Virus record (IMG/VR): IMGVR_UViG_3300028840_005860 | Span: 62,001-126,000 of that record | Direction: 5' to 3' (one strand) | DNA length: 64,000 bases | Shown: positions 28,009-48,455 of the stretch, one piece after another | Layout of the letters: the number at the start of each line of letters is the position of its first letter | Position numbering within the stretch: position 1 is the stretch's first letter | Translations under genes and position numbers: made by a program | Notes under the pieces: generated by a model | The model's input: the letters and a program-made list of their open reading frames with translations, nothing else | The model's database searches: none | What the model was told of the DNA's origin: nothing

Positions 28009-29330
28009 CGAAATCGAAGGACACAAAGCGGCAGCGTGCCGAGCTGCTGGGCATGTCGTACGGCACCGCGGAGAGGAAGCTCCGAAAGACGGTGATCCAC
28101 GAGCTTGCCCGTCAGACCGGGAAGAACGTCTGCATCGACTGTGGTCGCGAGATAGAGTCTCCCGACGACCTCGCCCTCGTTCACGTGGAGGACTGGCAGG
28201 AAGACCCTGACCAGTTCTTCGAGCTCACCAACGTCGCCTTCAGCCACGCCTCGTGCAAAGCATCGAGGGTCGGCAGGAGGCAGGAGGAAGAGAACGAGAT
28301 GAGGAGAGTAGAAGTAACCGTAGAAGACGCCGAGGGGCGAGCCCTCCCCGGCGTCAGCCACCAGGGCACCGTCTACGTGGCGGGAGAGAGGGACAAGCGG
28401 TATCAGATCAGGGTCCGCAACACCACCAACCGGCGGCTGCTCGTGGTCACCACCGTGGACGGCCGCAACGTGAACACGGGCAAGCCGGGGGACGTGAGCG
28501 ACAGCGGCCACGTCCTCGACCCCTGGCAAGAGTGGACCTTCGAGGGTTGGCGCCAGAGCGACGACCGGGTCGCCGCCTTCCGGTTCGGGGCGAAGAAGGA
28601 GGCCTACTCGAGCCAGATGGGCAGCCCGGAGAACGTCGGCGTCATCGGCGTCGCCGTGTTCGAGGAGCAGGAGCCCGAGCGGCGCATCGTCACGATCAGG
28701 GAGCGCGAGTACGTCCCGTACCCGGTGCCGAGGCCCTATCCGTGGCCGCGGCCGTGGGTGGATCCGTGGAGGCCGTGGGTTCAGCCCTACTGGTCGATCA
28801 GCACGGACAGCGTGACCCACGGCGGCGGCGGCGGCACGTTCACGTCGTCCGGGATGGTCACGTCGTCCGGGATGGTCGGGTCGGCCGGAGGAGCGGGGTC
28901 CTCGGCTGGCGGTTCCGGCGCCTCGAGCGTGCTCTCCGTGAGTTGCTCGAGTCCGGAAGCGTCCCCGAGCGGGGTCGGTGGGACGGGCATGGAGCTCAGC
29001 AACGACCTCGACCTCGACGACCACGTCTCCCTTGAGTACGGCTCAGGTAAGGGCAAGCACAAGGGGCTCCAGACGCAGCAACTCGGGACCGAGTACGGGG
29101 AGTCGGTCGTGTCTCAGGTGAGGAACACGAGCTTCAAGCGGGCCAGCGACGATCCGGTCGAGGTCCACGAGATCCGGTACGACAGCATGAAGGCGCTGCG
29201 GGCCAGGGGGATCATGGGACGAAGGCCCTCTCAGAAGCGCCGCCGGAAGCCACAGGCGTTTCCCAAGAGCCCGGCGGTGCAGGGAGGCTACTGTCCCCCG
29301 CCGCCCCACAGGAGGGCGTACAAGACCTGA
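28005..29330 (+). CDS. HNH-like N-terminal segment fused to a conserved beta-rich domain of unknown function
   Basis: CIDC...H..W...N.AFSH..C at the N-terminus; GWRQS..RVAAFRF...NVGVIGVAVFEE domain; possible internal start at 28299. Confidence 0.7.
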   Translation: MTKSKDTKRQRAELLGMSYGTAERKLRKTVIHELARQTGKNVCIDCGREIESPDDLALVHVEDWQEDPDQFFELTNVAFSHASCKASRVGRRQEEENEMRRVEVTVEDAEGRALPGVSHQGTVYVAGERDKRYQIRVRNTTNRRLLVVTTVDGRNVNTGKPGDVSDSGHVLDPWQEWTFEGWRQSDDRVAAFRFGAKKEAYSSQMGSPENVGVIGVAVFEEQEPERRIVTIREREYVPYPVPRPYPWPRPWVDPWRPWVQPYWSISTDSVTHGGGGGTFTSSGMVTSSGMVGSAGGAGSSAGGSGASSVLSVSCSSPEASPSGVGGTGMELSNDLDLDDHVSLEYGSGKGKHKGLQTQQLGTEYGESVVSQVRNTSFKRASDDPVEVHEIRYDSMKALRARGIMGRRPSQKRRRKPQAFPKSPAVQGGYCPPPPHRRAYKT

Positions 29331-31042: not shown

Positions 31043-31467
31043 GTAGCTTGCCGCCGCCTCCGGGCGTCACGCTCATGACCGCAGGTGACGCCCGTCGAGA
31101 ATTCCCGGACAAGGAGATCGGGCCCGCGTTGCCAGCCTGGGGAGGCTCTCCCGCGCTGCCGCCGGCGCCCGACGACTCGTGGTGCTGGGTGCTAGACGCA
31201 GGTGCGGAGGTCAGGTCGCGGTTCAAGACGCGAGAAGAGGCCCTGATGGACTCGTGGAGAACCTTGTGGTGGATCTGCGAGAGCTACGCCTACACGTCGC
31301 CCGAGCAGAAGCGTCAGATGAGGGACGCGAAGATCGCGTTCCTCATGGAGCAGGGTTGGGGGTTCCCGGACGACTACAAGCGGAGGCGGCGCGAGCACGA
31401 TGCGATCGAGAGGTCTCGCCGTCAGTGGATCGAACAGGAGCGGGCTACGGAGTTCACGGGGAAATGA
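31039..31467 (+). CDS. hypothetical protein
   Basis: ORF track. Confidence 0.6.
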   Translation: MSSLPPPPGVTLMTAGDARREFPDKEIGPALPAWGGSPALPPAPDDSWCWVLDAGAEVRSRFKTREEALMDSWRTLWWICESYAYTSPEQKRQMRDAKIAFLMEQGWGFPDDYKRRRREHDAIERSRRQWIEQERATEFTGK

Positions 31468-32297
31468 GAATCTTCCTGGTACGTCACGGGCAGTCGAGGG
31501 CCAACCTCGACTGGGAGGAGAACAGGCGCGTGGCCGACCACGCCATCGCGCTCTCGGAGGAGGGCAGGAAGCAGGCGCGGGCGGCCGGAGACTTCCTGGC
31601 CCGGTACTTCTTCGACCGGCTCACCGTGGGCCAGCCCTGGAGGACGCCGCCGATCCGGCTGTGGCACAGCCCCTACCTGCGGTGTCGGCAGACCGCGGCC
31701 GAGATCGAGGGCGCCTGCCGCCTCCCACTGGTCGACTCCGACTTCGACCACGACGACCGCACAACGTGGCAGATCGGCCCCGTCTACGGCGCGGCCGCGA
31801 ACGAGCCCCGCGTCTACCCCGACCGGCGGGACGGCGACCCGTGGTTCCTCGACGCGCGCGAGCACCTGCTCTTGGCCGAGCAGCAGTTCGGGATCTTCGA
31901 TGGCCTCTCCGACGACGAGCGCCGCGAGCGATACCCCGACATGCAGGCGTACTACGAGAAGTGCAAGAAGTTCGAGGGCAAGCTCTGGCCGAAGATGCCG
32001 CTTGGAGAATCTCGCTTCGAGGTCTGCCAGCGCGTCCACCAGGCGTTCGGCACGTTCCACCGCGACGCCCAGAAGCACGGGATCGAGAACGTCGTGATCG
32101 TCGGACACGGGACGACGAACCGCGCGTTCGTCATGATGTGGCTACACCTGCGGTACGAGTGGATGCACGAGGAACCCAACCCGAGAAACTGCTCCATACG
32201 GCTGCTCGAAGACGGTGAGGACAGGGGGTACATCTTCGAGGGTTTCGAGCACGCCGAGGGGTACAACCACGAGGCCAACCGAGAGACCGAGGAGTAG
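31464..32297 (+). CDS. histidine phosphatase (phosphoglycerate mutase superfamily)
   Basis: MRIFLVRHGQS; SPYLRC.QTA; EQQFG; GES; VGHG; NCS. Confidence 0.9.
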   Translation: MRIFLVRHGQSRANLDWEENRRVADHAIALSEEGRKQARAAGDFLARYFFDRLTVGQPWRTPPIRLWHSPYLRCRQTAAEIEGACRLPLVDSDFDHDDRTTWQIGPVYGAAANEPRVYPDRRDGDPWFLDAREHLLLAEQQFGIFDGLSDDERRERYPDMQAYYEKCKKFEGKLWPKMPLGESRFEVCQRVHQAFGTFHRDAQKHGIENVVIVGHGTTNRAFVMMWLHLRYEWMHEEPNPRNCSIRLLEDGEDRGYIFEGFEHAEGYNHEANRETEE

Positions 32298-34144: not shown

Positions 34145-34219
34145 CGGGCGGTGGCGCAGTCTGGCTAGCGCGCCTGCTTTGGGTGCAGGATGTCGCCGGT
34201 TCGAATCCGGCTCGCCCGA
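34145..34219 (+). tRNA. tRNA-Pro(TGG)
   Basis: Cloverleaf; cctgc-tt tgg gt-gcagg; GTTCGAATC. Confidence 0.9.
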
Positions 34220-34259
34220 CGAACAGAAGGAGCACGTCAAGCGAACGAAGAACACACAC

Positions 34260-34335
34260 GCCCCCGTAGCTCAGCGGAAGAGCATCGGTCTACGGAACCG
34301 AGCTGTCGGGAGTTCGAATCTCTCCGGGGGTGCCA
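34260..34335 (+). tRNA. tRNA-Arg(ACG)
   Basis: tcggt-ct acg ga-accga; encoded CCA. Confidence 0.9.
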
Positions 34336-34340
34336 TGCAC

Positions 34341-34417
34341 GTCCTCCGTAGCTCAATGGACAGAGCGTCCACCCCTGAGGGGTGGGAGGTTGCAGGTTCG
34401 ACTCCCGCGGGAGGGCG
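34341..34417 (+). tRNA. atypical tRNA: Arg-type body with enlarged anticodon arm (6-bp stem, cc TGA gg loop)
   Basis: Acceptor gtcctcc/ggagggc, D and T arms normal; anticodon arm 2 nt too long and lacks U33. Confidence 0.65.
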
Positions 34418-34427
34418 TGCAGCAGCT

Positions 34428-34502
34428 GTTCCCGTAGCTCAGCGGAAGAGCGTCGGTCTCCGGAACCGAAGGACGTGGGTTCGAGTCCCCCCGGGAATGC
34501 CA
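34428..34502 (+). tRNA. tRNA-Arg(CCG)
   Basis: tcggt-ct ccg ga-accga; CCA. Confidence 0.9.
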
Positions 34503-34503
34503 A

Positions 34504-34578
34504 CGGGATGTGGCGCAGTCTGGCTAGCGCGCGTCGTTCGGGTCGACGAGGCCGTGGGTTCAAATCCCACCATCCCGA
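34504..34578 (+). tRNA. tRNA-Pro(CGG)
   Basis: cgtcg-tt cgg gt-cgacg. Confidence 0.9.
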
Positions 34579-34812
34579 CTGAAAGAGAAACCATCATGGC
34601 GGACATCATCACGTGGACGACGCGGAGGCGGCTTTATCCGCATCGTGGAGTGGGCCCGCGAGGGCAGCCACGAGGCCGAGGTGGACGAGTTCCTCGCCCG
34701 GCAGAGGGCCGAGTGCGAGCGAGCTGAACGGAACAACCCCGTCCTGAGGGCGCGACGACGAAAGGAGAAACAACGAGAGAGGGCTGCACGACGCGCAGCC
34801 AAGAAAAAGCAA

Positions 34813-34887
34813 CGGGATATGGCGCAGTCTGGCTAGCGCACTTGACTGGGGGTCAAGGGGCCGCAGGTTCAAATCCTGCTATCCCGA
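34813..34887 (+). tRNA. tRNA-Pro(GGG)
   Basis: cttga-ct ggg gg-tcaag. Confidence 0.9.
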
Positions 34888-34922
34888 CGATGAGCGAGAA
34901 TCACGAAGAGACTACAAGCAAC

Positions 34923-35040: not shown

Positions 35041-35116
35041 GCCGCGGTGGCCAAGCTGGTAAAGGCGCCTGATTAAGGATCAGGAGATTTTGTCGGTTCG
35101 ACTCCGACCCGCGGTA
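35041..35116 (+). tRNA. tRNA-Leu(AAG) with short variable region
   Basis: cctga-tt aag ga-tcagg; gccgcgg/ccgcggt; A73. Confidence 0.8.
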
Positions 35117-35145
35117 CAGTGTGCTGATGGAGGACGAAAAACCCC

Positions 35146-35679
35146 ATGAGCACAAAAGTCCCAACCTGCAAGGTGTGTGGAGAGACGGACCCAGCGAAAC
35201 TGGTGAAAATCTCCAGAAATAGACGCCCTTACTACAGAGGATGGTGCGTTCCCTGTTACAGCGCATACCGGAAAGAGTGGAACAGACGAAATCCAGAACG
35301 AGCGAAGGCGACGTGGGCTCGAGCCCACGAGCGTCAGAAGAAGAAACGGAGGCAAGGACAGGACACCGCCCGGTTTATCTGGGTCGATTCACGAAGATCC
35401 GACAAGAAACGAGGATTCAAAAACGACCTGACCAAAGAGTTCATCGCGGAGCAGATCACCAAAGGTTGCTCGTACTGCGGGGAGAAAACGATCCGCATGA
35501 CGCTCGACCGCATCGACAACGAACGAGGACACACGACGGACAACGTCGTGCCCGCGTGCATCCGGTGCAACCACATCCGTGGGAACATGCCCTACGAAGC
35601 ATGGCTCTGTTTTAGGGCAGCGTTGCGGCGGGCGCGACGGGAGGGGTTATTCGGGAACTGGACTGGAAGAACTAGATAA
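35146..35679 (+). mobile_element. free-standing HNH-type homing endonuclease
   Basis: CKVC...CVPC; CSYCGE...LDRIDN..GH...NVVPACIRCN; lower GC; lies between Leu tRNAs. Confidence 0.85.
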
Positions 35680-35764
35680 GCCCAGGTGGCGGAATTGGTA
35701 GACGCGGTCGGTTCAGGACCGGCTGTCTTACGGCGTGCGAGTTCAAATCTCGCCCTGGGCACCA
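35680..35764 (+). tRNA. tRNA-Leu(CAG)
   Basis: gtcgg-tt cag ga-ccggc; long variable arm; CCA. Confidence 0.92.
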
Positions 35765-37537: not shown

Positions 37538-37611
37538 CCGCAGGGGACCCGAGTAGGTCGGGTACGGGGTTGTAAACTCCGCGGTAGCAGGTTCGACTCC
37601 TGTCCTGCGGT
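37538..37611 (+). tRNA. atypical tRNA-Tyr(GTA): short variable loop, C1:G72, U73, no U8
   Basis: ccgcagg/cctgcgg; accc/gggt D stem; cgggg-tt gta aa-ctccg; gcagg-ttcgact-cctgt. Confidence 0.7.
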
Positions 37612-37615
37612 CGAA

Positions 37616-37836: not shown

Positions 37837-39003
37837 ATGACGAAGGAGCACATGAACGTAGGCACGATCGGCCACGTCGATCACGGAAAGACCACCCTCA
37901 CGGCGGCGATCACGAAGCTCGCGGCCGCCCTGCATGGCGGGGAGGCCAAGGACTTCGATCAGATCGACAACGCGAAGGAGGAGCGCGAGCGTGGCGTCAC
38001 GATCAACGCGTCTCACGTGGAGTACGAGTCCGCGCGGCGCCACTACGCCCACATCGACTGCCCCGGGCACGCCGACTACATCAAGAACATGATCGTCGGC
38101 GCGTCCCAGATGGAGGGTGCGATCCTGCTGGTGGACGCCTCCCAGGGGCCGCAGAAGCAGACGGTGGAGCACGTCCTCCTGGCGAACCAGGTCGGCGTCT
38201 CGAGCGTCGTGGTCTTCGTGAACAAGGTGGACGTGGCCGATCCCGACCTCCTCGAGCTCGTCGAGGTCGAGGTCGCGGAGCAGCTGGAGCGCTTCGGTTA
38301 CGCACCCGTCTTCGTGCGGGGATCAGCCCTCAAGGCCCTTCAGGCCCTGGAGACTGGGGACGCGGAGTCCGAGGACGTCGCCTGCATCCGCGAGCTCCTC
38401 GACGCCATGGACGCCCACTTCAAAGCTCCCGACCGGGACATGGACTCTCCGTTCCTGCTCCCGATCGAGCACGTCTACACGATCCCAGGCCGGGGCACCG
38501 TCGTGACCGGCCGCGTCGAGCGCGGCCGCGTCAGGGTCGGCGACAGGGTCGAGATCGCCGGTCGCCGGGATGATGGCCGGGAGGTCGTGGTCACCGGCAC
38601 GCAGGCGTTCCACCGGGACATCCCGGAGGCCCACGCGGGCCTGAACGTCGGCCTGCTCCTGCGGGGCGTCGCTCGAGACGAGGTCGAGCGCGGCCAGGTG
38701 ATCGTGGCGCCGGGCTCTATCCGGTCGCACACCTCGGGGAGCGCCGAGATCTTCGTGCTCACGAAGGAGGAGGGCGGACGTCACACGCCGTTCGGCAGCG
38801 GCTACACCCCGCAGCTGTTCTTCGGGGCCTCGGACGTGTCCGCGACCCTGAGGACCGACGAGGACGCGGCCGTCGAGCCCGGCGACAGGGCGACCGTCGC
38901 GTTCACCCTCGACAAGCCGACCGCCTTCGAGCCCGGGATGCGCTTCGCCATCCGCGAGGGCGGGAAGACGGTGGGTGCCGGCGTCGTGCTCGACGCGGGC
39001 TAG
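37837..39003 (+). CDS. tuf: elongation factor Tu (divergent)
   Basis: [18 protein letters not shown]; ERERGVTI; [15 protein letters not shown]; NKVD; GSALKAL; [14 protein letters not shown]; [13 protein letters not shown]. Confidence 0.95.
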
Positions 39004-41589: not shown

Positions 41590-41666
41590 GCGTGCGTAGC
41601 CCAAATGGTAGAGGCGCTGGCTTCAAATCCCAGGAGTTGGAGGTTCGAGTCCTCCCGCGCGCACCA
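41590..41666 (+). tRNA. tRNA-Leu(CAA) with short variable loop
   Basis: ctggc-tt caa at-cccag (C31:C39 mismatch); 5-nt variable loop; A73, CCA. Confidence 0.75.
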
Positions 41667-41667
41667 C

Positions 41668-41748
41668 GGCCCCGTGGCGGAAATGGTCTACGCGGCGGAC
41701 TTAAACTCCGCGCCTCCGGGCGTCTCGGTTCGAATCCGAGCGGGGCCA
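41668..41748 (+). tRNA. tRNA-Leu(TAA)
   Basis: gcgga-ct taa ac-tccgc; long variable arm. Confidence 0.9.
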
Positions 41749-41749
41749 C

Positions 41750-41908
41750 CTAGTCGGCGGAGAACCAGTTGCCCTGGCTGTCCTGGAGCACCCTGCGGCC
41801 GCACACGCCGCACCGGCTGCTGAACGAGCATCCGTCGAAGTCGAGCCGAGCTCCGCGACCGTCGTGCCAGCCGAGCACGTCGTGGGCGAACCACCGCAGG
41901 AACCGCAT
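41750..41908 (-). CDS. small Cys-containing protein
   Basis: MRFLRWFAHDVLGWH...CGVCG. Confidence 0.5.
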   Translation of the reverse strand: MRFLRWFAHDVLGWHDGRGARLDFDGCSFSSRCGVCGRRVLQDSQGNWFSAD

Positions 41909-43080
41909 CACTCGTCGTCTCCGTGAAAGAGGATCCTGTCCTCGGTGGTCTCGACCTTCCAGTCGGCGGCCATCTTGGGGGTCTTCGTCTCGATGCGCTG
42001 GACCGAGACCTTTAGGCCGTCGCCGTCTCCTTCGGTGACGACGGGCTTCGTCCTCTCGTGAACCGCGTAGCCGAAGTCGGGAACCATGAAGTCCCCCTCC
42101 TGGTACGAGTAGAACAGGCCGTCCTGCATGCGGAACCTCCGCACCCTCTCGGGCATGAAGAGTCCGGCTAGGGTCCGCGTCGCGGGTCGCTTCTCCTTGT
42201 AGTCCACGACGGCGACGTTGGTCGGAAAGTTCTGCACGTACCGCGGGCCCTCCGGCTGGACGCGGAACAGGTCGGGGAGCCAGCCCGAGATCTCCGTCTG
42301 ACTGCCTGAGCCGCAGCGTTCGAGGCTGAACATGGCGCGCCACCAGGTAGCATCGACGAGGCGAGCGACGCACTCGTCGAGAGTCCGCTGCACGCGCTCC
42401 ATCCAGGGGGCCGCGGCGCCGAACAGCGGCACGAGCTTGCGCCACTGTGCGGCGACGAGATGCCAGTCGTCGCGCGTGCCCTGGACCGAGATCGCCGGGA
42501 ACCCGCACGCGTACATGCCGTACTCGTAGTAGGGCGAGCACAGGTCGCAGAACGAGGCGTACATGGCGTGTCGCGACCGCTCGGAGGTGGTCGAGAACTG
42601 CGGCAGGAACAGGCTCGCTTCCGTCGGGACGGCCCCCCGGAGGGCCTGCACGAGCCGGTTCAGGGGCATCACGATCTCCTCCGCGGCCTCGACCCAGATC
42701 TCCTGTTTCTCGTGGCTCCTCGTGAACAGGTGCCGGTACGGTTCGGGGCTCTCCTTGACGACGCCGACGAGCTCGGAGAGGACCGTGAACCACAGGACGT
42801 CGGGCGTGATCACGATGCCCAGGTGGTCGGCCCAGCACTTCTCGAGGTACTCGAGGTAGTTCCGATGGTAGATCGAGCCGTCCTTGGGCATCCCGACGTG
42901 ACGCAGGAACAGGCTCTGCGTCGTGGCACCAGTGCGCCAGTCCTTCTCGCGGTCGTGTAGCCGGTCGAGGAATGCGTCGCAGGGGTCGAGGTCTTCGGCC
43001 TGGCTCGTCTCGTTGTTGAACGAGCGTGGGACGCGCGGAGTCCCCACCTTCACGTCGGACAGCTTGAACTCGGTCGTCAT
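41908..43080 (-). CDS. DUF4419 family protein
   Basis: H..LVITPD.LW..VL; FSTT; YYEY....CGFPAI.V.GT.DDW. Confidence 0.8.
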   Translation of the reverse strand: MTTEFKLSDVKVGTPRVPRSFNNETSQAEDLDPCDAFLDRLHDREKDWRTGATTQSLFLRHVGMPKDGSIYHRNYLEYLEKCWADHLGIVITPDVLWFTVLSELVGVVKESPEPYRHLFTRSHEKQEIWVEAAEEIVMPLNRLVQALRGAVPTEASLFLPQFSTTSERSRHAMYASFCDLCSPYYEYGMYACGFPAISVQGTRDDWHLVAAQWRKLVPLFGAAAPWMERVQRTLDECVARLVDATWWRAMFSLERCGSGSQTEISGWLPDLFRVQPEGPRYVQNFPTNVAVVDYKEKRPATRTLAGLFMPERVRRFRMQDGLFYSYQEGDFMVPDFGYAVHERTKPVVTEGDGDGLKVSVQRIETKTPKMAADWKVETTEDRILFHGDDE

Positions 43081-43091
43081 GGTCTCCTCCT

Positions 43092-43529
43092 CTATACCCC
43101 CTCGGAGGCCCAAGGGCAGCCCACGAGGGCGAAGGAGGGGTCGACGGCCCTCCCGCCCCGACGCACCTCCAGGTGCAGGTGAGGGCCCGTGGTGCGTCCT
43201 GAGCGGCCCATGTGGCCTATCTGATCCGCAGCCTCGACGCGCTGCCCGACGTGGACGGCAACGTCCTTCAGGTGAGCGAACATGACTCGGAGTCGCGCGG
43301 TGCGCATCACGACGTAGAGCCCGGCCCTCCGGGTTCGACGGATTTTCACGATGCGCCCAGGCCAGGGCGCGAGAACCTCCGTGCCGCGGGCATTGGCGAT
43401 GTCGACGCCGCCGTGCATGCGCCACCGACCCGTCACGGGATGCTGGCGTCGTCCGAATTCGGAGGAGACCCATCCGTCAGTCGGACAGACCGGCCAGACC
43501 TTGAGGAGGATCAGGAGCAGAACCACCAC
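43092..43529 (-). CDS. M23 family metallopeptidase
   Basis: SS.FG.R.HPV...HGGVDIA...; FAHL; G.TTGPHLHLEV. Confidence 0.9.
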   Translation of the reverse strand: MVVLLLILLKVWPVCPTDGWVSSEFGRRQHPVTGRWRMHGGVDIANARGTEVLAPWPGRIVKIRRTRRAGLYVVMRTARLRVMFAHLKDVAVHVGQRVEAADQIGHMGRSGRTTGPHLHLEVRRGGRAVDPSFALVGCPWASEGV

Positions 43530-45585: not shown

Positions 45586-46836
45586 TTGGATGAGGTCTTG
45601 GAGCGGCGTTTACCGAAGGATCGCCCCGGTTCTTTTGTCGGCCGTCGCTTCGGTAAACTTGTCGTGATTGCGGAGTTCGCGGGCAAGAAGTATGCGTTTG
45701 CTCCGCAGTGTCTGTGTCGGTGTGACTGCGGGAAAGAGCACTGGGTCGTTCGGGGCAACCTCGTGCGTACAAAGAGCTGTGGGTGTGGACGCCGTCCCAA
45801 TCTCGTGGGACGTAGGTTTGGAAACCTCGTTGTCGGGCGCCCCATGCCGCGCAGAACAAAGTCGGGACGCAAGCAGACGGCCTACGCTTGTCGCTGTGAC
45901 TGCGGAAAGGAGACGACCGTGTATCCCGGCGCGTTGCGGTCTGGAGAGACGGTCAGCTGTGGTTGCGTGCGAGAGATGCGATGGGCAGCTTCTCGGATTC
46001 CTACCGGGCGGCGGTTCGGTCGCCTTGAAGTGCTGGAACGTGTGCGCCGGGACGGACATCCCGGGTGGTTCTATCGATGTCGCTGTGACTGTGGAAAACA
46101 GACTATCGTCGACGGCGTCGCGCTGAAGAGAGGCGCCACGCGGAGCTGCGGGTGTCTTCGAGACGAGGTCGCTAGCCTTCCTGACGGAGAGGCCATGCGT
46201 AACGCGATCTTTTCGGGATACCGCAAGAACGCCCGAAAGAGGAACCTGCGGTTTGAGTTGGGCTTGGAGGAGGCTGGGTCTTTGTTTCAGGGGACCTGTC
46301 ACTACTGTGGCAGCCCTCCTCAGATGCGTAGCCATGCAACGGTGCGTGGAGGATACGCGGCGAACGGGATTGATCGTCCTGATAACTCCTCGGGTTACAT
46401 TCCGGGAAACATGGTTTCGTGCTGCACGATCTGTAACTTGGCAAAGGGCACGAAATCCGTGGAAGGTTTCCTGCGATGGGTTCGTCGTGTCGCGTATTTC
46501 GCGGCGACGTCGCCCATTCTCGTGCACGGAAAGCGCGAGACAGCGAAAGACCGACGCAGATTGTCGAAATACAAGGAAGGCGCTCGTGGGCGACGACTTG
46601 CCTTTGAGCTGACAGACGACCTTGCGATCGTGCTCCTGCATTCGCCCTGCACGTACTGTGGTCGGATGCCTGGTAACGGAATCGATAGGATCGATAACTC
46701 GAGAGGTTACGAGCCCGACAACGTTGTGCCATGCTGCGCGGTCTGCAATCGGGCGAAGATCTCGCTTTCCGTAGAGTGCTTCTTCGCTTGGGCTCGGCGT
46801 CTCGTAGCGCATCAGACGGAGATCTCCAACAGATAG
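45586..46836 (+). mobile_element. homing endonuclease with four G.RFG.L.V...C.CDCG repeats and two tandem HNH-like domains
   Basis: Repeats visible in the translation; CHYCG...GIDRPDN..GY...N.V.CC.ICN and CTYCG...GIDRIDN..GY...NVVPCC.VCN; lower GC; antisense to its neighbours. Confidence 0.85.
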
Positions 46837-48455
46837 CGCAACCTGTGGCTCGGCCCCTTCGTGGTTCCGAAGACCACGTGCTCGTCGTTGACGAGGGAGG
46901 CACAGTGACGGTTCGTCGCGTAAATGCTGTCGAACCCCCTCGGGCAGCCATAGAGGCTCCACGCCTTCTTAGCCATGTAGGGTTTGCCGAGCACGACGTC
47001 TCCCATGAACATGAAGGCTCCCCGCCCTCGTATGGCTCCCGCGCCGGAAGAGTACAGTCCCGAACCTATCGAGCAGTAGTTCGCGGCCTTGCGAAAGTCC
47101 GACGCCCAGTAGATTCCGTGCCCGAACGCCGCCCCCGTGATGTGGACGCCCTTCAAAGACTTGGGGAGACGCAGGTCGGTCTGCAGGATCGGAGCCACGT
47201 TCACCGAGCGCGTTCCGTGGAACAGGAGAGCCATGTTCGCTCGCTCGTAGAGATCTGCGATGTCCGAGACGTCGTGTCGCTCGTCCGGCTGCATGTCGGC
47301 CTGCTCGTGATTCCCTTTGCGGACCGACGCGACGTGCTTGGCCCCCGCGACGAAGAGGTCGTCCACTCGAGAACGCCGAATGACGAACGCATTGAGGACG
47401 CGCACGTCTCCGATGTTTCTGTGTCGGTCCTTGGACATCCTCGTGAAGGTCTCGACCACCCACTTCCCGCGCCCGCTCTTCATGTCGAGCCACTCGATCT
47501 CCGCCTTCAGCGCGGCGTTCGGATCGATCTGCTGCTCCTCCTGGACCTCGACCTCCCAGTCCTCGTTCTTCAGCGCGGCCTCGAACGCGTCGAGGTCCTG
47601 CTGCACGAGGAGGATGTTGGTCGAGTTCAGGATGACGGCGGACGGGTCTCCGCCACGAGGGATGGGTCTCGGCACGATGGTCGCGACGTAGGTCGAGAGC
47701 TCCTGGAGCTTCTTGTCCCTGAGCTGGCGGTCGTGGTCGTCACCGATCCGTTTGATCATCGCGAGGGCCTGCGGGATGAGGTCGTCGCGGACCTCGGTGA
47801 TCGCCTCCATGGTGGGGGTGACGCCCGACGCCCTGGAGGCCGCGCGGGCGTAGTCGGCGGTGCCTCCGACGAGCGACTTCGCGAGCGCGATGACCTGCGG
47901 CTGCGCGTCGATCTTCTTCTTGGAGGTCTTCTTCTTGGTGGCTTTCTTCTTGGCCTTCTTCTTCTCGACGCCGCTGTCGTCCTTGATCAGGCATGCGTCG
48001 GGGAGCCCGCGCTCGCGGGTCGCGAGGCGCTGGACGACGTATCCGTCCTTGCCGGACTTGCCGACCCAGATCTCCTTGCCGCCGACCTTCTTCTGCTGGA
48101 GCCGCTTGATGTTCTTGCTGCGGCACTGCTTCTCGAAGAACGTGCGGGCGTCATCCTCTCCGCTGCACGTGACGAACTGGAAGTCTTGCCCTCGGAAGGA
48201 GCCGTCCCAGGTCTTGCCTCCGCCGCTGACTCGTCCCCACTCGAGGTAGACGTACCAGGCTCCGTCCTGGCGCACGACCCCGGCGTGGTAGTACTTGTTG
48301 TTGTTCGCGTCCCCGAACTGGTTGACGCAGACCATGTCCGCGATCCCCACCTCGGATCCGAAGTCGTCCTGGTCGACCGCGGGGCGACCCTGGTACTTGA
48401 AGTCGTCCGCCGAGCAGCCCGACGGCATCTCTTTCCTGCCGAGTTTGACAGCCAT
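46812..48455 (-). CDS. poly(ADP-ribose) polymerase-like protein (WGR + helical + ART catalytic domain)
   Basis: NNNKYY...YLEWGRV (WGR); LLFHGT, FGHGIYWAS..KAANY, VVLGK and NDEHVVF give the H-Y-E triad. Confidence 0.9.
   Translation of the reverse strand: MAVKLGRKEMPSGCSADDFKYQGRPAVDQDDFGSEVGIADMVCVNQFGDANNNKYYHAGVVRQDGAWYVYLEWGRVSGGGKTWDGSFRGQDFQFVTCSGEDDARTFFEKQCRSKNIKRLQQKKVGGKEIWVGKSGKDGYVVQRLATRERGLPDACLIKDDSGVEKKKAKKKATKKKTSKKKIDAQPQVIALAKSLVGGTADYARAASRASGVTPTMEAITEVRDDLIPQALAMIKRIGDDHDRQLRDKKLQELSTYVATIVPRPIPRGGDPSAVILNSTNILLVQQDLDAFEAALKNEDWEVEVQEEQQIDPNAALKAEIEWLDMKSGRGKWVVETFTRMSKDRHRNIGDVRVLNAFVIRRSRVDDLFVAGAKHVASVRKGNHEQADMQPDERHDVSDIADLYERANMALLFHGTRSVNVAPILQTDLRLPKSLKGVHITGAAFGHGIYWASDFRKAANYCSIGSGLYSSGAGAIRGRGAFMFMGDVVLGKPYMAKKAWSLYGCPRGFDSIYATNRHCASLVNDEHVVFGTTKGPSHRLRYLLEISV

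What the first reader, a model, noticed from the sequence alone, without database searches (positions are those of the whole stretch)
35041..35116. tRNA-Leu with an A34 anticodon (AAG) replacing Leu(GAG), with a near-absent variable arm
Bacteria normally use A34 (edited to inosine by TadA) only in tRNA-Arg(ACG); Leu(AAG) is a rare exception. No Leu(GAG) is present in the window although CTC is a very frequent codon in these ORFs. The variable region is only 7 nt, against the class II long arm. It would need extended TadA specificity or unmodified-A superwobble.
Basis: partly seen in the sequence, partly recalled or inferred. Interest (0 to 1): 0.65.

Follow-up and report, generated by a model that had tools for sequence, protein, structure and literature searches.

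The report
Phage tRNA-Leu(AAG) with short variable loop
A huge uncultured marine-sediment phage carries a real leucine tRNA with the unusual anticodon AAG and no long extra arm, and tRNAs of this kind turn out to be common in phages but absent from the bacterial genomes sampled.

Summary
Window 35041-35116 is a well-formed tRNA (ARAGORN; Rfam 58 bits) with anticodon AAG, A73 and a 7-nt variable loop. A34 is identical in contigs from three independent metagenome runs, so it is not a base-call error.

The window lies in a 230-kb IMG/VR phage record (65.7% GC) with 36 tRNAs and its own EF-Tu. The record has no Leu(GAG) or Leu(UAG), and CTC is 51% of Leu codons.

Synteny shows a replacement. The slot after tRNA-Pro(GGG) holds Leu(GAG) in two sister phages, a long-armed Leu(AAG) in a 619-kb sister, and the short Leu(AAG) here.

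Neither oddity is unique.
- Short-loop Leu tRNAs form a covarying phage family that carries only Leu anticodons, including in cultured phages.
- The same scan found it in at least 116 bacterial species of many phyla (0 of 100 short).

Most likely it is charged by host LeuRS and read as IAG after host TadA deamination. No phage deaminase or LeuRS was found. Editing is inferred, not shown. The main rival is unmodified A34 reading mainly CUU.

The parts
35041..35116 (+). tRNA-Leu(AAG), 76 nt to the discriminator. Acceptor 35041-47/35109-15 (G1.U72), D arm 35050-66, anticodon arm 35068-84, V loop 35085-91, T arm 35092-108, A73 at 35116. CCA is not encoded.
   Evidence: ARAGORN, Rfam 58.2 bits, sequence
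35075..35077 (+). Anticodon AAG in loop U32 U33 A34 A35 G36 G37 A38. The loop fits the YUAMGRA motif of the Streptococcus pyogenes TadA.
   Evidence: the motif is from PMC11472039. A34 is unchanged in contigs of three runs.
35085..35091 (+). 7-nt variable loop AGAUUUU in place of the class II arm. The same loop occurs in L098:1122-1200. AGAUUCU occurs in Tunturiibacter phage Tunturi_5 Leu(CAG).
34145..34888 (+). Upstream tRNA run: Pro(UGG), Arg(ACG) 34260-34335, an odd 77-nt tRNA-like gene, Arg(CCG), Pro(CGG), Pro(GGG). It is syntenic with L027 and with L010/L033.
35680..35764 (+). tRNA-Leu(CAG), long-armed, 85 nt. It is the only other CUN-box Leu tRNA of the phage.
41590..41666 (+). Second short-loop tRNA-Leu of this phage: CAA, 5-nt V loop, A73, CCA encoded. 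It sits next to the long-armed Leu(UAA) at 41668-41750.
37837..39003 (+). Phage-encoded EF-Tu (388 aa) inside the tRNA island. It was used as the anchor to find related huge phages.
   Evidence: Pfam GTP_EFTU 5.4e-56 plus domains D2 and D3; 26 viral relatives

Best explanation
This is a functional phage-encoded leucine tRNA for the CUN box. It sits in the tRNA/EF-Tu island of an uncultured huge phage from marine sediment or seawater.

It occupies the genomic slot that sister phages fill with tRNA-Leu(GAG). It belongs to a phage-specific type of tRNALeu in which the long variable arm is replaced by a 5-8 nt loop, while the Leu-type D arm and A73 are kept.

Inferred steps:
1. The host CCA-adding enzyme completes the 3' end.
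2. The host LeuRS charges it. Bacterial LeuRS reads A73 and the D/T-loop core, not the arm or the anticodon.
3. The host TadA deaminates A34 to inosine.
4. Together with Leu(CAG), it then covers all four CUN codons, including the phage's commonest Leu codon CUC. This mirrors Arg(ACG)+Arg(CCG) in the CGN box.

Shown: the gene, its structure, its synteny, its family and its distribution. Inferred: charging, editing and decoding.
For: A real, constrained tRNA:
- Rfam 58 bits.
- 23 short-loop Leu tRNAs from 11 records, our phage among them, keep the cloverleaf in 96.7% of cells. All 20 pairs show double changes, 0 of 500 shuffles reach this, and slid controls give 36-49%.
- Family members carry only Leu anticodons: GAG, CAG, UAG, CAA, UAA, AAG.
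- A73, A14, G18G19, A20a and a 3-bp D stem are kept.

Charging:
- E. coli LeuRS needs A73 and the D/T core, not the arm. Arm-less variants are still charged (PMC9976931).
- No class-Ia synthetase is found in the phage.

AAG replaces GAG:
- Synteny of Pro-Arg(ACG)-...-Pro(GGG)-Leu(x)-...-Tyr-EF-Tu-Leu-Leu, with x = GAG in L010/L033, AAG long in L027 and AAG short here.
- GAG and AAG co-occur in 1 of 80 viral loci.

I34 logic:
- The 619-kb sister G001 (92% complete) has 54 tRNAs for all 20 amino acids, with GNN+UNN+CNN in the other four-codon boxes (Gly lacks CCC) but only AAG+CAG for CUN and ACG+CCG for CGN.
- CTC is 51% of Leu in G000 and 38% in G001.
- The loop UUAAGGA fits YUAMGRA and equals the phage's own Arg(ACG) loop at positions 33-38 except position 35.
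- Cellular Leu(AAG) genes with this same loop occur in many phyla, including high-GC sediment lineages.
- TadA editing of tRNALeu(AAG) is proven in Streptococcus (PMC11472039, PMC13249217).

A34 is genuine.
Against: - There is no RNA data, and no listed run is RNA.
- The host is unknown. The nearest cultured phage by terminase is only 26% identical.
- E. coli TadA does not edit S. pyogenes tRNALeu(AAG) in vitro (PMC11472039). In E. coli, changes at loop positions 32, 37 or 38 block editing of an AAG tRNA (PMC11066159). This loop has U32 and G37.
- No TadA-like gene is found in G000, G001 or G002, so editing depends on an unidentified host enzyme.
- A phage does not need a self-sufficient tRNA set, and this phage also carries tRNAs for very rare codons (UUA 0.4 per 1000), so a pure CUU reader is not excluded.
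- G15 stands in place of the A15 of the E. coli A15-U48 identity pair.
- The nearest-neighbour MFE is a rod at -31.1 kcal/mol, against -28.0 for the cloverleaf.
- The records are only 90-92% complete, so a Leu(GAG) gene could lie in a missing part.
Confidence: 0.55

Rival explanations
1. The tRNA is functional and charged with leucine, but A34 stays unmodified. It then reads mainly CUU, with weak CUC reading by A:C wobble, and host Leu(GAG) handles CUC.
For: - E. coli TadA does not edit S. pyogenes tRNALeu(AAG) (PMC11472039).
- Unmodified A34 Leu and His tRNAs strongly prefer U-ending codons, and loop changes at positions 32, 37 or 38 block editing in E. coli (PMC11066159).
- No phage deaminase was found.
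- The phage keeps tRNAs for other rare codons such as UUA, AUA and AGA.
Against: - AAG sits exactly where sisters have GAG and almost never co-occurs with it. That fits equivalent decoding of CUU and CUC.
- CUU is only 7% of Leu here, against 51% for CUC.
- G001's otherwise complete tRNA set would lack any CUC or CUA reader.
- Cellular Leu(AAG) is widespread and is edited wherever it has been tested.
Confidence: 0.3
2. The short loop or the A34 is a counter-defence feature. On this reading, phage copies of class II tRNAs that lack the long arm, and that often have A37, escape host tRNA-targeting toxins or nucleases that use the variable arm or anticodon loop as a handle. They would also replace depleted host tRNALeu.
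For: - Short loops occur in 16 of 71 unique viral Leu(AAG) sequences and 0 of 100 cellular ones (p = 2.6e-7). A37 occurs in 27 of 71 against 0 of 100.
- Short and long Leu isoacceptors coexist in the same phages.
- There is precedent for arm-dependent recognition: MenT3 loses activity on tRNASer when the variable loop is deleted (PMC11541572).
- Phage tRNAs with anticodon-loop changes have been proposed to evade tRNases (PMC10264068).
Against: - No arm-dependent defence against tRNALeu is known in any candidate host.
- The one prokaryotic Schlafen studied cleaves class I tRNAs (PMC13056530).
- This is compatible with the best explanation rather than exclusive of it.
Confidence: 0.15
3. It is a decaying or non-functional tRNA gene, or a tRNA-like element with a role outside translation.
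For: - CCA is not encoded.
- The MFE is not the cloverleaf.
- The same phage holds weak tRNA-like genes at 34341-34417 (31.7 bits) and 37538-37612 (29.8 bits).
Against: - All four stems are fully paired, and the T loop, U8, A14, G18G19, U33 and A73 are canonical.
- The sequence is identical in three samples.
- The same design, down to the 7-nt loop, recurs in unrelated phages with compensatory stem changes.
- 21 of the 35 parsed tRNAs of this phage also lack a complete encoded CCA.
Confidence: 0.05
4. The tRNA is charged with an amino acid other than leucine and recodes CUN codons.
For: The class II arm, a hallmark of tRNALeu, is missing. G15 replaces A15.
Against: - G36 with A35 occurs only in Leu anticodons, so the anticodon-reading synthetases for Val, Ile, Met and Phe should reject it (inference from known identity rules, PMC9976931).
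- There is no G3.U70 for AlaRS.
- There is no long arm for SerRS.
- The family bears only Leu anticodons.
Confidence: 0.03

Closest known systems
Bacterial tRNALeu(AAG), read as IAG, edited by TadA (Streptococcus pyogenes, S. mutans, Oenococcus oeni; PMC11472039, PMC13249217)
   Same: - Anticodon AAG stands in place of GAG, never beside it.
- The loop fits YUAMGRA (U33 A34 A35 G36 G37 A38).
- A73 and a Leu-type D arm are present.
- It sits alongside tRNAArg(ACG).
   Different: - It is encoded by a phage of 65.7% GC from marine sediment, not by low-GC Lactobacillales.
- It has a 7-nt variable loop instead of the class II arm; the cellular genes sampled are all 82-91 nt.
- Leu(UAG) is absent from this phage but kept in those bacteria.
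- Editing is not shown here.
Short-variable-loop tRNALeu genes of phages. They are annotated as tRNA-Leu without comment in Sinorhizobium phage Phosso PV764938.1, Acinetobacter phage phi1_092033 PQ859668.1 and Vibrio phage vB_ValS_X1. In Tunturiibacter phage Tunturi_5 PP885688.1 the gene is not annotated and was found here by ARAGORN.
   Same: - 74-80 nt with a 5-8 nt V loop.
- The D arm is GYCCAA..GGYAGAGG or GGYAAAG.
- A73 is present, and G1.U72 is frequent.
- They lie in tRNA arrays next to long-armed Leu genes.
- Tunturi_5 Leu(CAG) and L098 Leu(AAG) share the 7-nt AGAUUYU loop.
   Different: The cultured examples seen carry GAG, CAG, UAG, UAA or CAA, not AAG. I found no paper describing the group.
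Animal mitochondrial tRNALeu
   Same: A class-I-like tRNALeu that is leucylated without a long arm. Its identity rests on A73 and A14 (PMC9976931).
   Different: It is unrelated in descent, AT-rich and structurally relaxed, with a dedicated mitochondrial LeuRS. The review states that mitochondria are the only place where tRNALeu lacks the arm.
Unmodified A34 tRNAs (Mycoplasma tRNAThr(AGU), yeast mitochondrial tRNAArg(ACG); from my own knowledge, plus PMC3711424 and PMC11066159)
   Same: A34 is encoded outside tRNAArg(ACG), and no dedicated deaminase is in sight.
   Different: Those occur in reduced genomes with minimal tRNA sets. Here the tRNA is one of 36 in a phage that also carries Arg(ACG), and Arg(ACG) itself presupposes a host TadA.

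Membership tests
tRNA (Rfam RF00005) | Cloverleaf with conserved U8, A14, G18G19, U33 and the T loop, scoring above the gathering threshold | tested here: met
   58.2 bits against 29; ARAGORN; all stems paired
Bacterial class II tRNALeu | Long variable arm (stem-loop, more than 10 nt) | tested here: not met
   The variable region is 7 nt, AGAUUUU, with no stem
Bacterial class II tRNALeu | Discriminator A73 | tested here: met
   A at 35116
Bacterial class II tRNALeu | Leu-type D arm: 3-bp stem with a 13:22 mismatch, A14, G18G19 placement, A20a | tested here: met
   GCC-A-AGCUGGUAA-A-GGC has the same architecture as the long-armed Leu genes of G000 and G001
Bacterial class II tRNALeu | A15-U48 reverse Levitt pair (E. 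coli identity element) | tested here: inconclusive
   Position 15 is G and the last V-loop base is U. A G15.U48 pair is possible but is not the E. coli element. Most short-family members have A15.
Bacterial class II tRNALeu | Leucylation by LeuRS | not testable with these tools
   Needs an aminoacylation assay. No phage LeuRS was found.
TadA substrates (I34 tRNAs) | A34 in a 7-nt loop on a 5-bp stem that fits YUACGAA (strict) or YUAMGRA (relaxed) | tested here: met
   UUAAGGA fits the relaxed motif only. It differs from the strict E. coli motif at positions 35 and 37.
TadA substrates (I34 tRNAs) | Observed A-to-I conversion | not testable with these tools
   No RNA run holds the locus
TadA substrates (I34 tRNAs) | A deaminase of suitable specificity present in the system | tested here: inconclusive
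   No PF00383 or PF14437 hit in G000, G001 or G002. The host and its TadA are unknown. Phage Arg(ACG) implies reliance on a host TadA.
Phage short-variable-loop tRNALeu (group delimited here) | 74-80 nt, V loop of 5-8 nt, Leu-type D arm, A73, a Leu anticodon, and cloverleaf kept by compensatory changes | tested here: met
   Alignment A1 with pair counts. Closest designs are L098 (same V loop), L117, and the short L026 GAG gene.

The most novel reading that the evidence does not exclude
Phages have evolved their own class-I-like version of tRNALeu, with a 5-8 nt variable loop and often A37, across all Leu anticodons. This design is absent from the cellular genes sampled. It would serve a phage-specific purpose, such as escape from host factors that grip the long arm or the anticodon loop, or tuning to phage EF-Tu.

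Leu(AAG)/I34 decoding would also be far more widespread in bacteria and their phages than the Lactobacillales-centred literature says. That implies relaxed TadA specificity in many phyla.
Probability: 0.3. Interest if true: 0.75.

Novelty: new variant of a known kind. Interest (0 to 1): 0.55.

Why it matters
Three textbook statements are touched by this gene.
- Bacterial-type systems are said to use A34/I34 almost only in tRNAArg.
- tRNALeu(AAG) is said to be essentially confined to Bacilli.
- tRNALeu is said to keep its long arm everywhere except in animal mitochondria.

This gene and its relatives suggest that all three are too narrow. If the editing is confirmed, many bacterial TadA enzymes accept a second substrate. 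That bears on mRNA editing and on base-editor ancestry.

If the short-loop Leu tRNAs are charged and used, phages have repeatedly built minimal leucine adaptors. These could serve as compact orthogonal tRNA scaffolds. They could also be a read-out of host tRNA-directed defences.

Cultured systems for testing exist: Sinorhizobium phage Phosso, Tunturiibacter phage Tunturi_5, 100-kb Acinetobacter phages and T5-like Vibrio phages.

Tried and rejected
- An exact search for the anticodon arm (GCCTGATTRAGGATCAGG) in viral contigs gave 8 hits. None was a tRNA, so they are chance matches.
- Megablast of the region against cultured phages gave only a 47-nt tRNA-Pro match.
- 'Relatives' cannot be drawn for a virus record.
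- I tested whether the Leu(AAG) loop mimics the Arg(ACG) loop of the same phage at position 37. They agree in 8 of 14 loci, and A37 is also common in phage Leu(CAG) and Leu(UAG). This is not informative and was dropped.
- EF-Tu against cultured phages gave only bacterial contamination at about 55% identity. EF-Tu and Leu(AAG) are absent from LR745208.1, Tunturi_5 and Phosso.
- Phage T5 itself has a normal 85-nt Leu(UAG), so the older T5 tRNA literature does not cover the short type.
- Short-pattern tests for Leu(GAG) in five Leu(AAG)-bearing MAGs were near the chance level. They only hint that three of the MAGs lack GAG.
- Host assignment failed. tRNA similarity (G001 Leu(AAG) is 81% like that of a 9.3-Mb 'Deltaproteobacteria' MAG) is not decisive.
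- No RNA run holds the locus.
- The second ARAGORN 'Leu(aag)' calls in G000 (29103-29174) and G001 (386700-386778) have G33 in the loop (GUAAGCA) and G73 or U73. I do not count them as Leu tRNAs.
- Paper searches for phage Leu(AAG) or short-arm phage tRNALeu found nothing. The library is open-access only, so this is weak evidence of novelty.

Full report
**What is there.**
The window is bases 62001-126000 of a 230,069-bp IMG/VR virus record (G000; 65.7% GC; CheckV about 90% complete). ARAGORN finds 28 tRNA genes in the window and 36 in the record. One of them is tRNA-Leu(AAG) at 35041-35117, and Rfam's tRNA model matches 35041-35116 at 58.2 bits.

The sequence parses into these parts:
- a 7-bp acceptor stem with G1.U72
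- U8 and G9
- a Leu-type D arm (3-bp stem, A13:A22 mismatch, A14, G18G19, A20a)
- a perfect 5-bp anticodon stem with loop UUAAGGA (A34 at 35075)
- a 7-nt variable loop AGAUUUU
- a perfect T arm with loop UUCGACU
- A73
- no encoded CCA (21 of the 35 parsed tRNAs of this phage also lack a complete encoded CCA)

The whole record has Leu tRNAs for AAG, CAG, CAA and UAA only. In about 266 ORFs picked by GC3, CTC is 51% of Leu codons (45.5 per 1000), CTT 7% and CTA 3%.

Contigs of three public runs from three studies reproduce the locus without a single difference. A base-call error at position 34 is therefore excluded.

**Context and relatives.**
The tRNAs lie in an island that also encodes an EF-Tu at 37837-39003. 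Using that protein as an anchor, I fetched 26 loci from IMG/VR, mostly from contigs of 190-620 kb. EF-Tu again sits among tRNAs in most of them.

Gene order is conserved across three of these phages:
- G000: Pro(UGG)-Arg(ACG)-Arg(CCG)-Pro(CGG)-Pro(GGG)-Leu(AAG, 77 nt)-Leu(CAG)-...-Tyr-EF-Tu-Leu(CAA)-Leu(UAA).
- L027 (619-kb record G001; EF-Tu 67% identical): the same order, with a canonical 87-nt long-armed Leu(AAG).
- L010/L033: the same slot holds an 87-nt Leu(GAG), followed by a 77-nt Leu(UAG).

Our gene and the G001 gene share G1.U72, A73 and an identical anticodon loop. AAG has therefore replaced GAG within this lineage, and the arm was lost or exchanged afterwards.

G001 (92% complete) has 54 tRNAs for all 20 amino acids. 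It has GNN+UNN+CNN in the Pro, Ala, Thr, Val and Ser boxes (Gly has GCC and UCC only). It has only ACG+CCG for CGN and AAG+CAG for CUN. That set reads every sense codon only if AAG behaves like IAG. In G001, CTC is 38% of Leu.

**The short loop is a family trait.**
ARAGORN 'Leu' genes of 74-80 nt are frequent in these loci. I aligned 23 of them from 11 records, our phage among them (alignment A1).
- They keep the cloverleaf in 96.7% of cells.
- Every one of the 20 pairs shows compensatory double changes.
- 0 of 500 shuffles reach this, and slid controls give 36-49%.
- U8, A14, U33 and A35 are invariant, and A73 is nearly so.
- The anticodons are GAG, CAG, UAG, CAA, UAA and AAG, and nothing else.

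The type also exists in cultured phages:
- Sinorhizobium phage Phosso (469 kb) has four such genes. It is the best INPHARED match to our gene.
- Tunturiibacter phage Tunturi_5 has a 79-nt Leu(CAG) with V loop AGAUUCU.
- Acinetobacter phage phi1_092033 has an 80-nt Leu(UAG) with V loop UGAUUCU.
- The T5-like Vibrio phage vB_ValS_X1 has 77-nt Leu(UAG) and Leu(UAA).

T5 itself has a normal 85-nt gene. L098 (a 296-kb contig) carries a 79-nt Leu(AAG) with exactly our V loop, AGAUUUU. L117 (62% GC) carries a 77-nt Leu(AAG) of the 5-nt-loop subtype.

**Leu(AAG) is not rare.**
I scanned with a pattern for the Leu-type 5' half followed by YUAAGR. The pattern says nothing about the variable region.
80 of them hold an ARAGORN Leu(AAG), at 28-63% GC and usually inside tRNA arrays. 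Only one of the 80 also has Leu(GAG).
116 hold a Leu(AAG), nearly all as a lone tRNA gene.

The bacterial hits come from Clostridia, Prochlorococcus/Synechococcus, Verrucomicrobiota, Planctomycetota, Cloacimonadota, Fermentibacteria, Synergistota, Myxococcota/'Deltaproteobacteria', Acidimicrobiales, Ca. Actinomarina and only a few Lactobacillales.

This is wider than the statement that almost all bacterial Leu(AAG) genes lie in Bacilli (PMC13249217). Some MAG contigs could be misbinned.

Among unique sequences, the two collections differ sharply:

| Feature | Viral | Cellular | Fisher p |
|---|---|---|---|
| Short loop (80 nt or less) | 16 of 71 | 0 of 100 | 2.6e-7 |
| A37 | 27 of 71 | 0 of 100 | 1.4e-12 |

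Both features are therefore phage-specific within this sample.

**Mechanism.**
*Charging.* E. coli LeuRS uses A73, the A15-U48 pair, G18G19 and A20a, and D/T-loop contacts. The long arm and the anticodon are dispensable, and arm-less variants are still charged (PMC9976931). Our gene has all of these except A15, which is G15. The phages encode no class-Ia synthetase, so host LeuRS is the inferred enzyme. A35 with G36 occurs only in Leu anticodons, which argues against other anticodon-reading synthetases.

*Editing.* The loop fits the YUAMGRA motif of S. pyogenes TadA, an enzyme that edits tRNALeu(AAG). E. coli TadA does not edit that tRNA (PMC11472039). In E. coli an AAG tRNA in an Arg2-type loop is about 15% edited, and loop changes at positions 32, 37 or 38 abolish this. 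Unedited A34 then reads U far better than C (PMC11066159). No PF00383 or PF14437 deaminase is present in G000, G001 or G002. The phage's own Arg(ACG), with loop CUACGGA, already presupposes a host TadA, and it matches the Leu loop at positions 33-38 except position 35.

Four observations bear on editing:
- AAG substitutes for GAG in synteny and almost never accompanies it.
- The tRNA-set logic of G001 requires an IAG-like reader.
- CUC dominates among Leu codons.
- Leu(AAG) is widespread in cellular lineages typical of sediments.

From these I judge I34 more likely than not. It remains an inference. An unmodified, CUU-biased reader is the main rival.

**What stays open.**
- The host is unknown. 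The terminase is 54% identical to that of an uncultured 485-kb phage (LR745208.1) and 26% identical to Tunturi_5.
- Why phages shorten the arm is unknown. MenT3 needs the long loop of tRNASer (PMC11541572), which shows that arm-dependent tRNA toxins exist. Nothing links such a toxin to tRNALeu here.
- In the 7-nt-loop subtype, the D loop GGYAAAG and the V loop AGAUUYU are complementary. RNAfold therefore prefers a rod (-31.1 kcal/mol) over the cloverleaf (-28.0 kcal/mol). I cannot say whether this reflects a tertiary contact.

**Limits.**
- Codon usage rests on a crude GC3-based ORF picker.
Counts are lower bounds, and the 'UA' (positions 8-9) subtype is under-sampled.
- ARAGORN isotypes follow the anticodon only.
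- The literature search covers open-access papers only.

Noticed in passing
window 37837-39003 (+): The phage encodes a full-length EF-Tu (GTP_EFTU, D2 and D3) in the middle of the tRNA island. 26 IMG/VR loci, mostly from 190-620-kb contigs, hold relatives at 49-69% identity, in most cases again among tRNAs. Cultured-phage hits are only bacterial contamination at about 55% identity. This looks like an uncultured huge-phage EF-Tu clade.
   Followed up: partly
Genome-contig loci L207-L326: tRNA-Leu(AAG) genes occur in at least 116 bacterial species representatives from many phyla: Clostridia, picocyanobacteria, Verrucomicrobiota, Planctomycetota, Cloacimonadota, Myxococcota-like MAGs, Acidimicrobiales and others. 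This is much wider than the 'almost all in Bacilli' of the literature. All have G37 and long arms.
   Followed up: partly
viral loci L078-L193: 38% of unique phage Leu(AAG) genes have A37 (loop CUAAGAA, the E. coli Arg2 loop with C35A). None of 100 cellular ones does. A37 is also common in phage Leu(CAG) and Leu(UAG).
   Followed up: partly
window 34341-34417 (+): A 77-nt tRNA-like gene is called Ser(UGA) by ARAGORN but scores only 31.7 bits. It has a class I D arm, C33 instead of U33 (loop CCUGAGG) and a T-stem mismatch. It is not a credible tRNASer. It is inserted between Arg(ACG) and Arg(CCG), where sister phages have nothing.
   Followed up: no
window 37538-37612 (+); G001:C1:373827-373897: An odd 75-nt tRNA-like gene lies just upstream of the long-armed tRNA-Tyr (ARAGORN Tyr(GUA); 29.8 bits; C1-G72; U73; unusual D arm). 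A 71-nt element called 'Ile(AAU)' sits at the same syntenic place in G001. It may be a conserved non-standard tRNA-like RNA.
   Followed up: no
G000 tRNAs: G1.U72 wobble pairs close the acceptor stem in 7 of 35 tRNAs of this phage: Arg ACG, CCG and UCU; Glu UUC and CUC; Ile UAU; Leu AAG. They also occur in 9 of 23 short-loop Leu tRNAs. This is unusual for bacterial-type tRNAs.
   Followed up: no
window 35041-35116; L098:1122-1200; L197:6001-6079; L198:2489-2568: In the 7-nt V-loop subtype, the D loop GGYAAAG and the V loop (A/U)GAUUYU are complementary in all four examples. Thermodynamic folding prefers a rod over the cloverleaf by about 3 kcal/mol.
   Followed up: partly
G000:C1:42837-44432 (-) = L205:12837-14432: A fusion of DpdA (7-deazaguanine DNA transglycosylase family, 1.6e-52) with a QueD-like PTPS domain. 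It suggests deazaguanine modification of the phage DNA.
   Followed up: no
window 46812-48455 (-), 31179-32297 (+), 41908-43473 (-): A PARP catalytic-domain protein (1.2e-16), a histidine-phosphatase-family protein (6e-26) and a DUF4419 protein (4e-31) lie within or beside the tRNA island.
   Followed up: no
G001:C1:386700-386778 (-) and G000:C1:29103-29174 (-): Both phages have a second ARAGORN 'Leu(aag)' call with loop GUAAGCA (G33), U73 or G73, and a class I body. These are either false calls or tRNA-like genes with a non-standard loop, conserved between the two phages.
   Followed up: no
window 35146-35679 (+): A 177-aa ORF lies between Leu(AAG) and Leu(CAG), where L027 has only a short spacer. 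It has an N-terminal CxxC...CxxC motif and no Pfam hit. It may be a homing-endonuclease-like insertion, like the heg genes among the T5 tRNAs.
   Followed up: no
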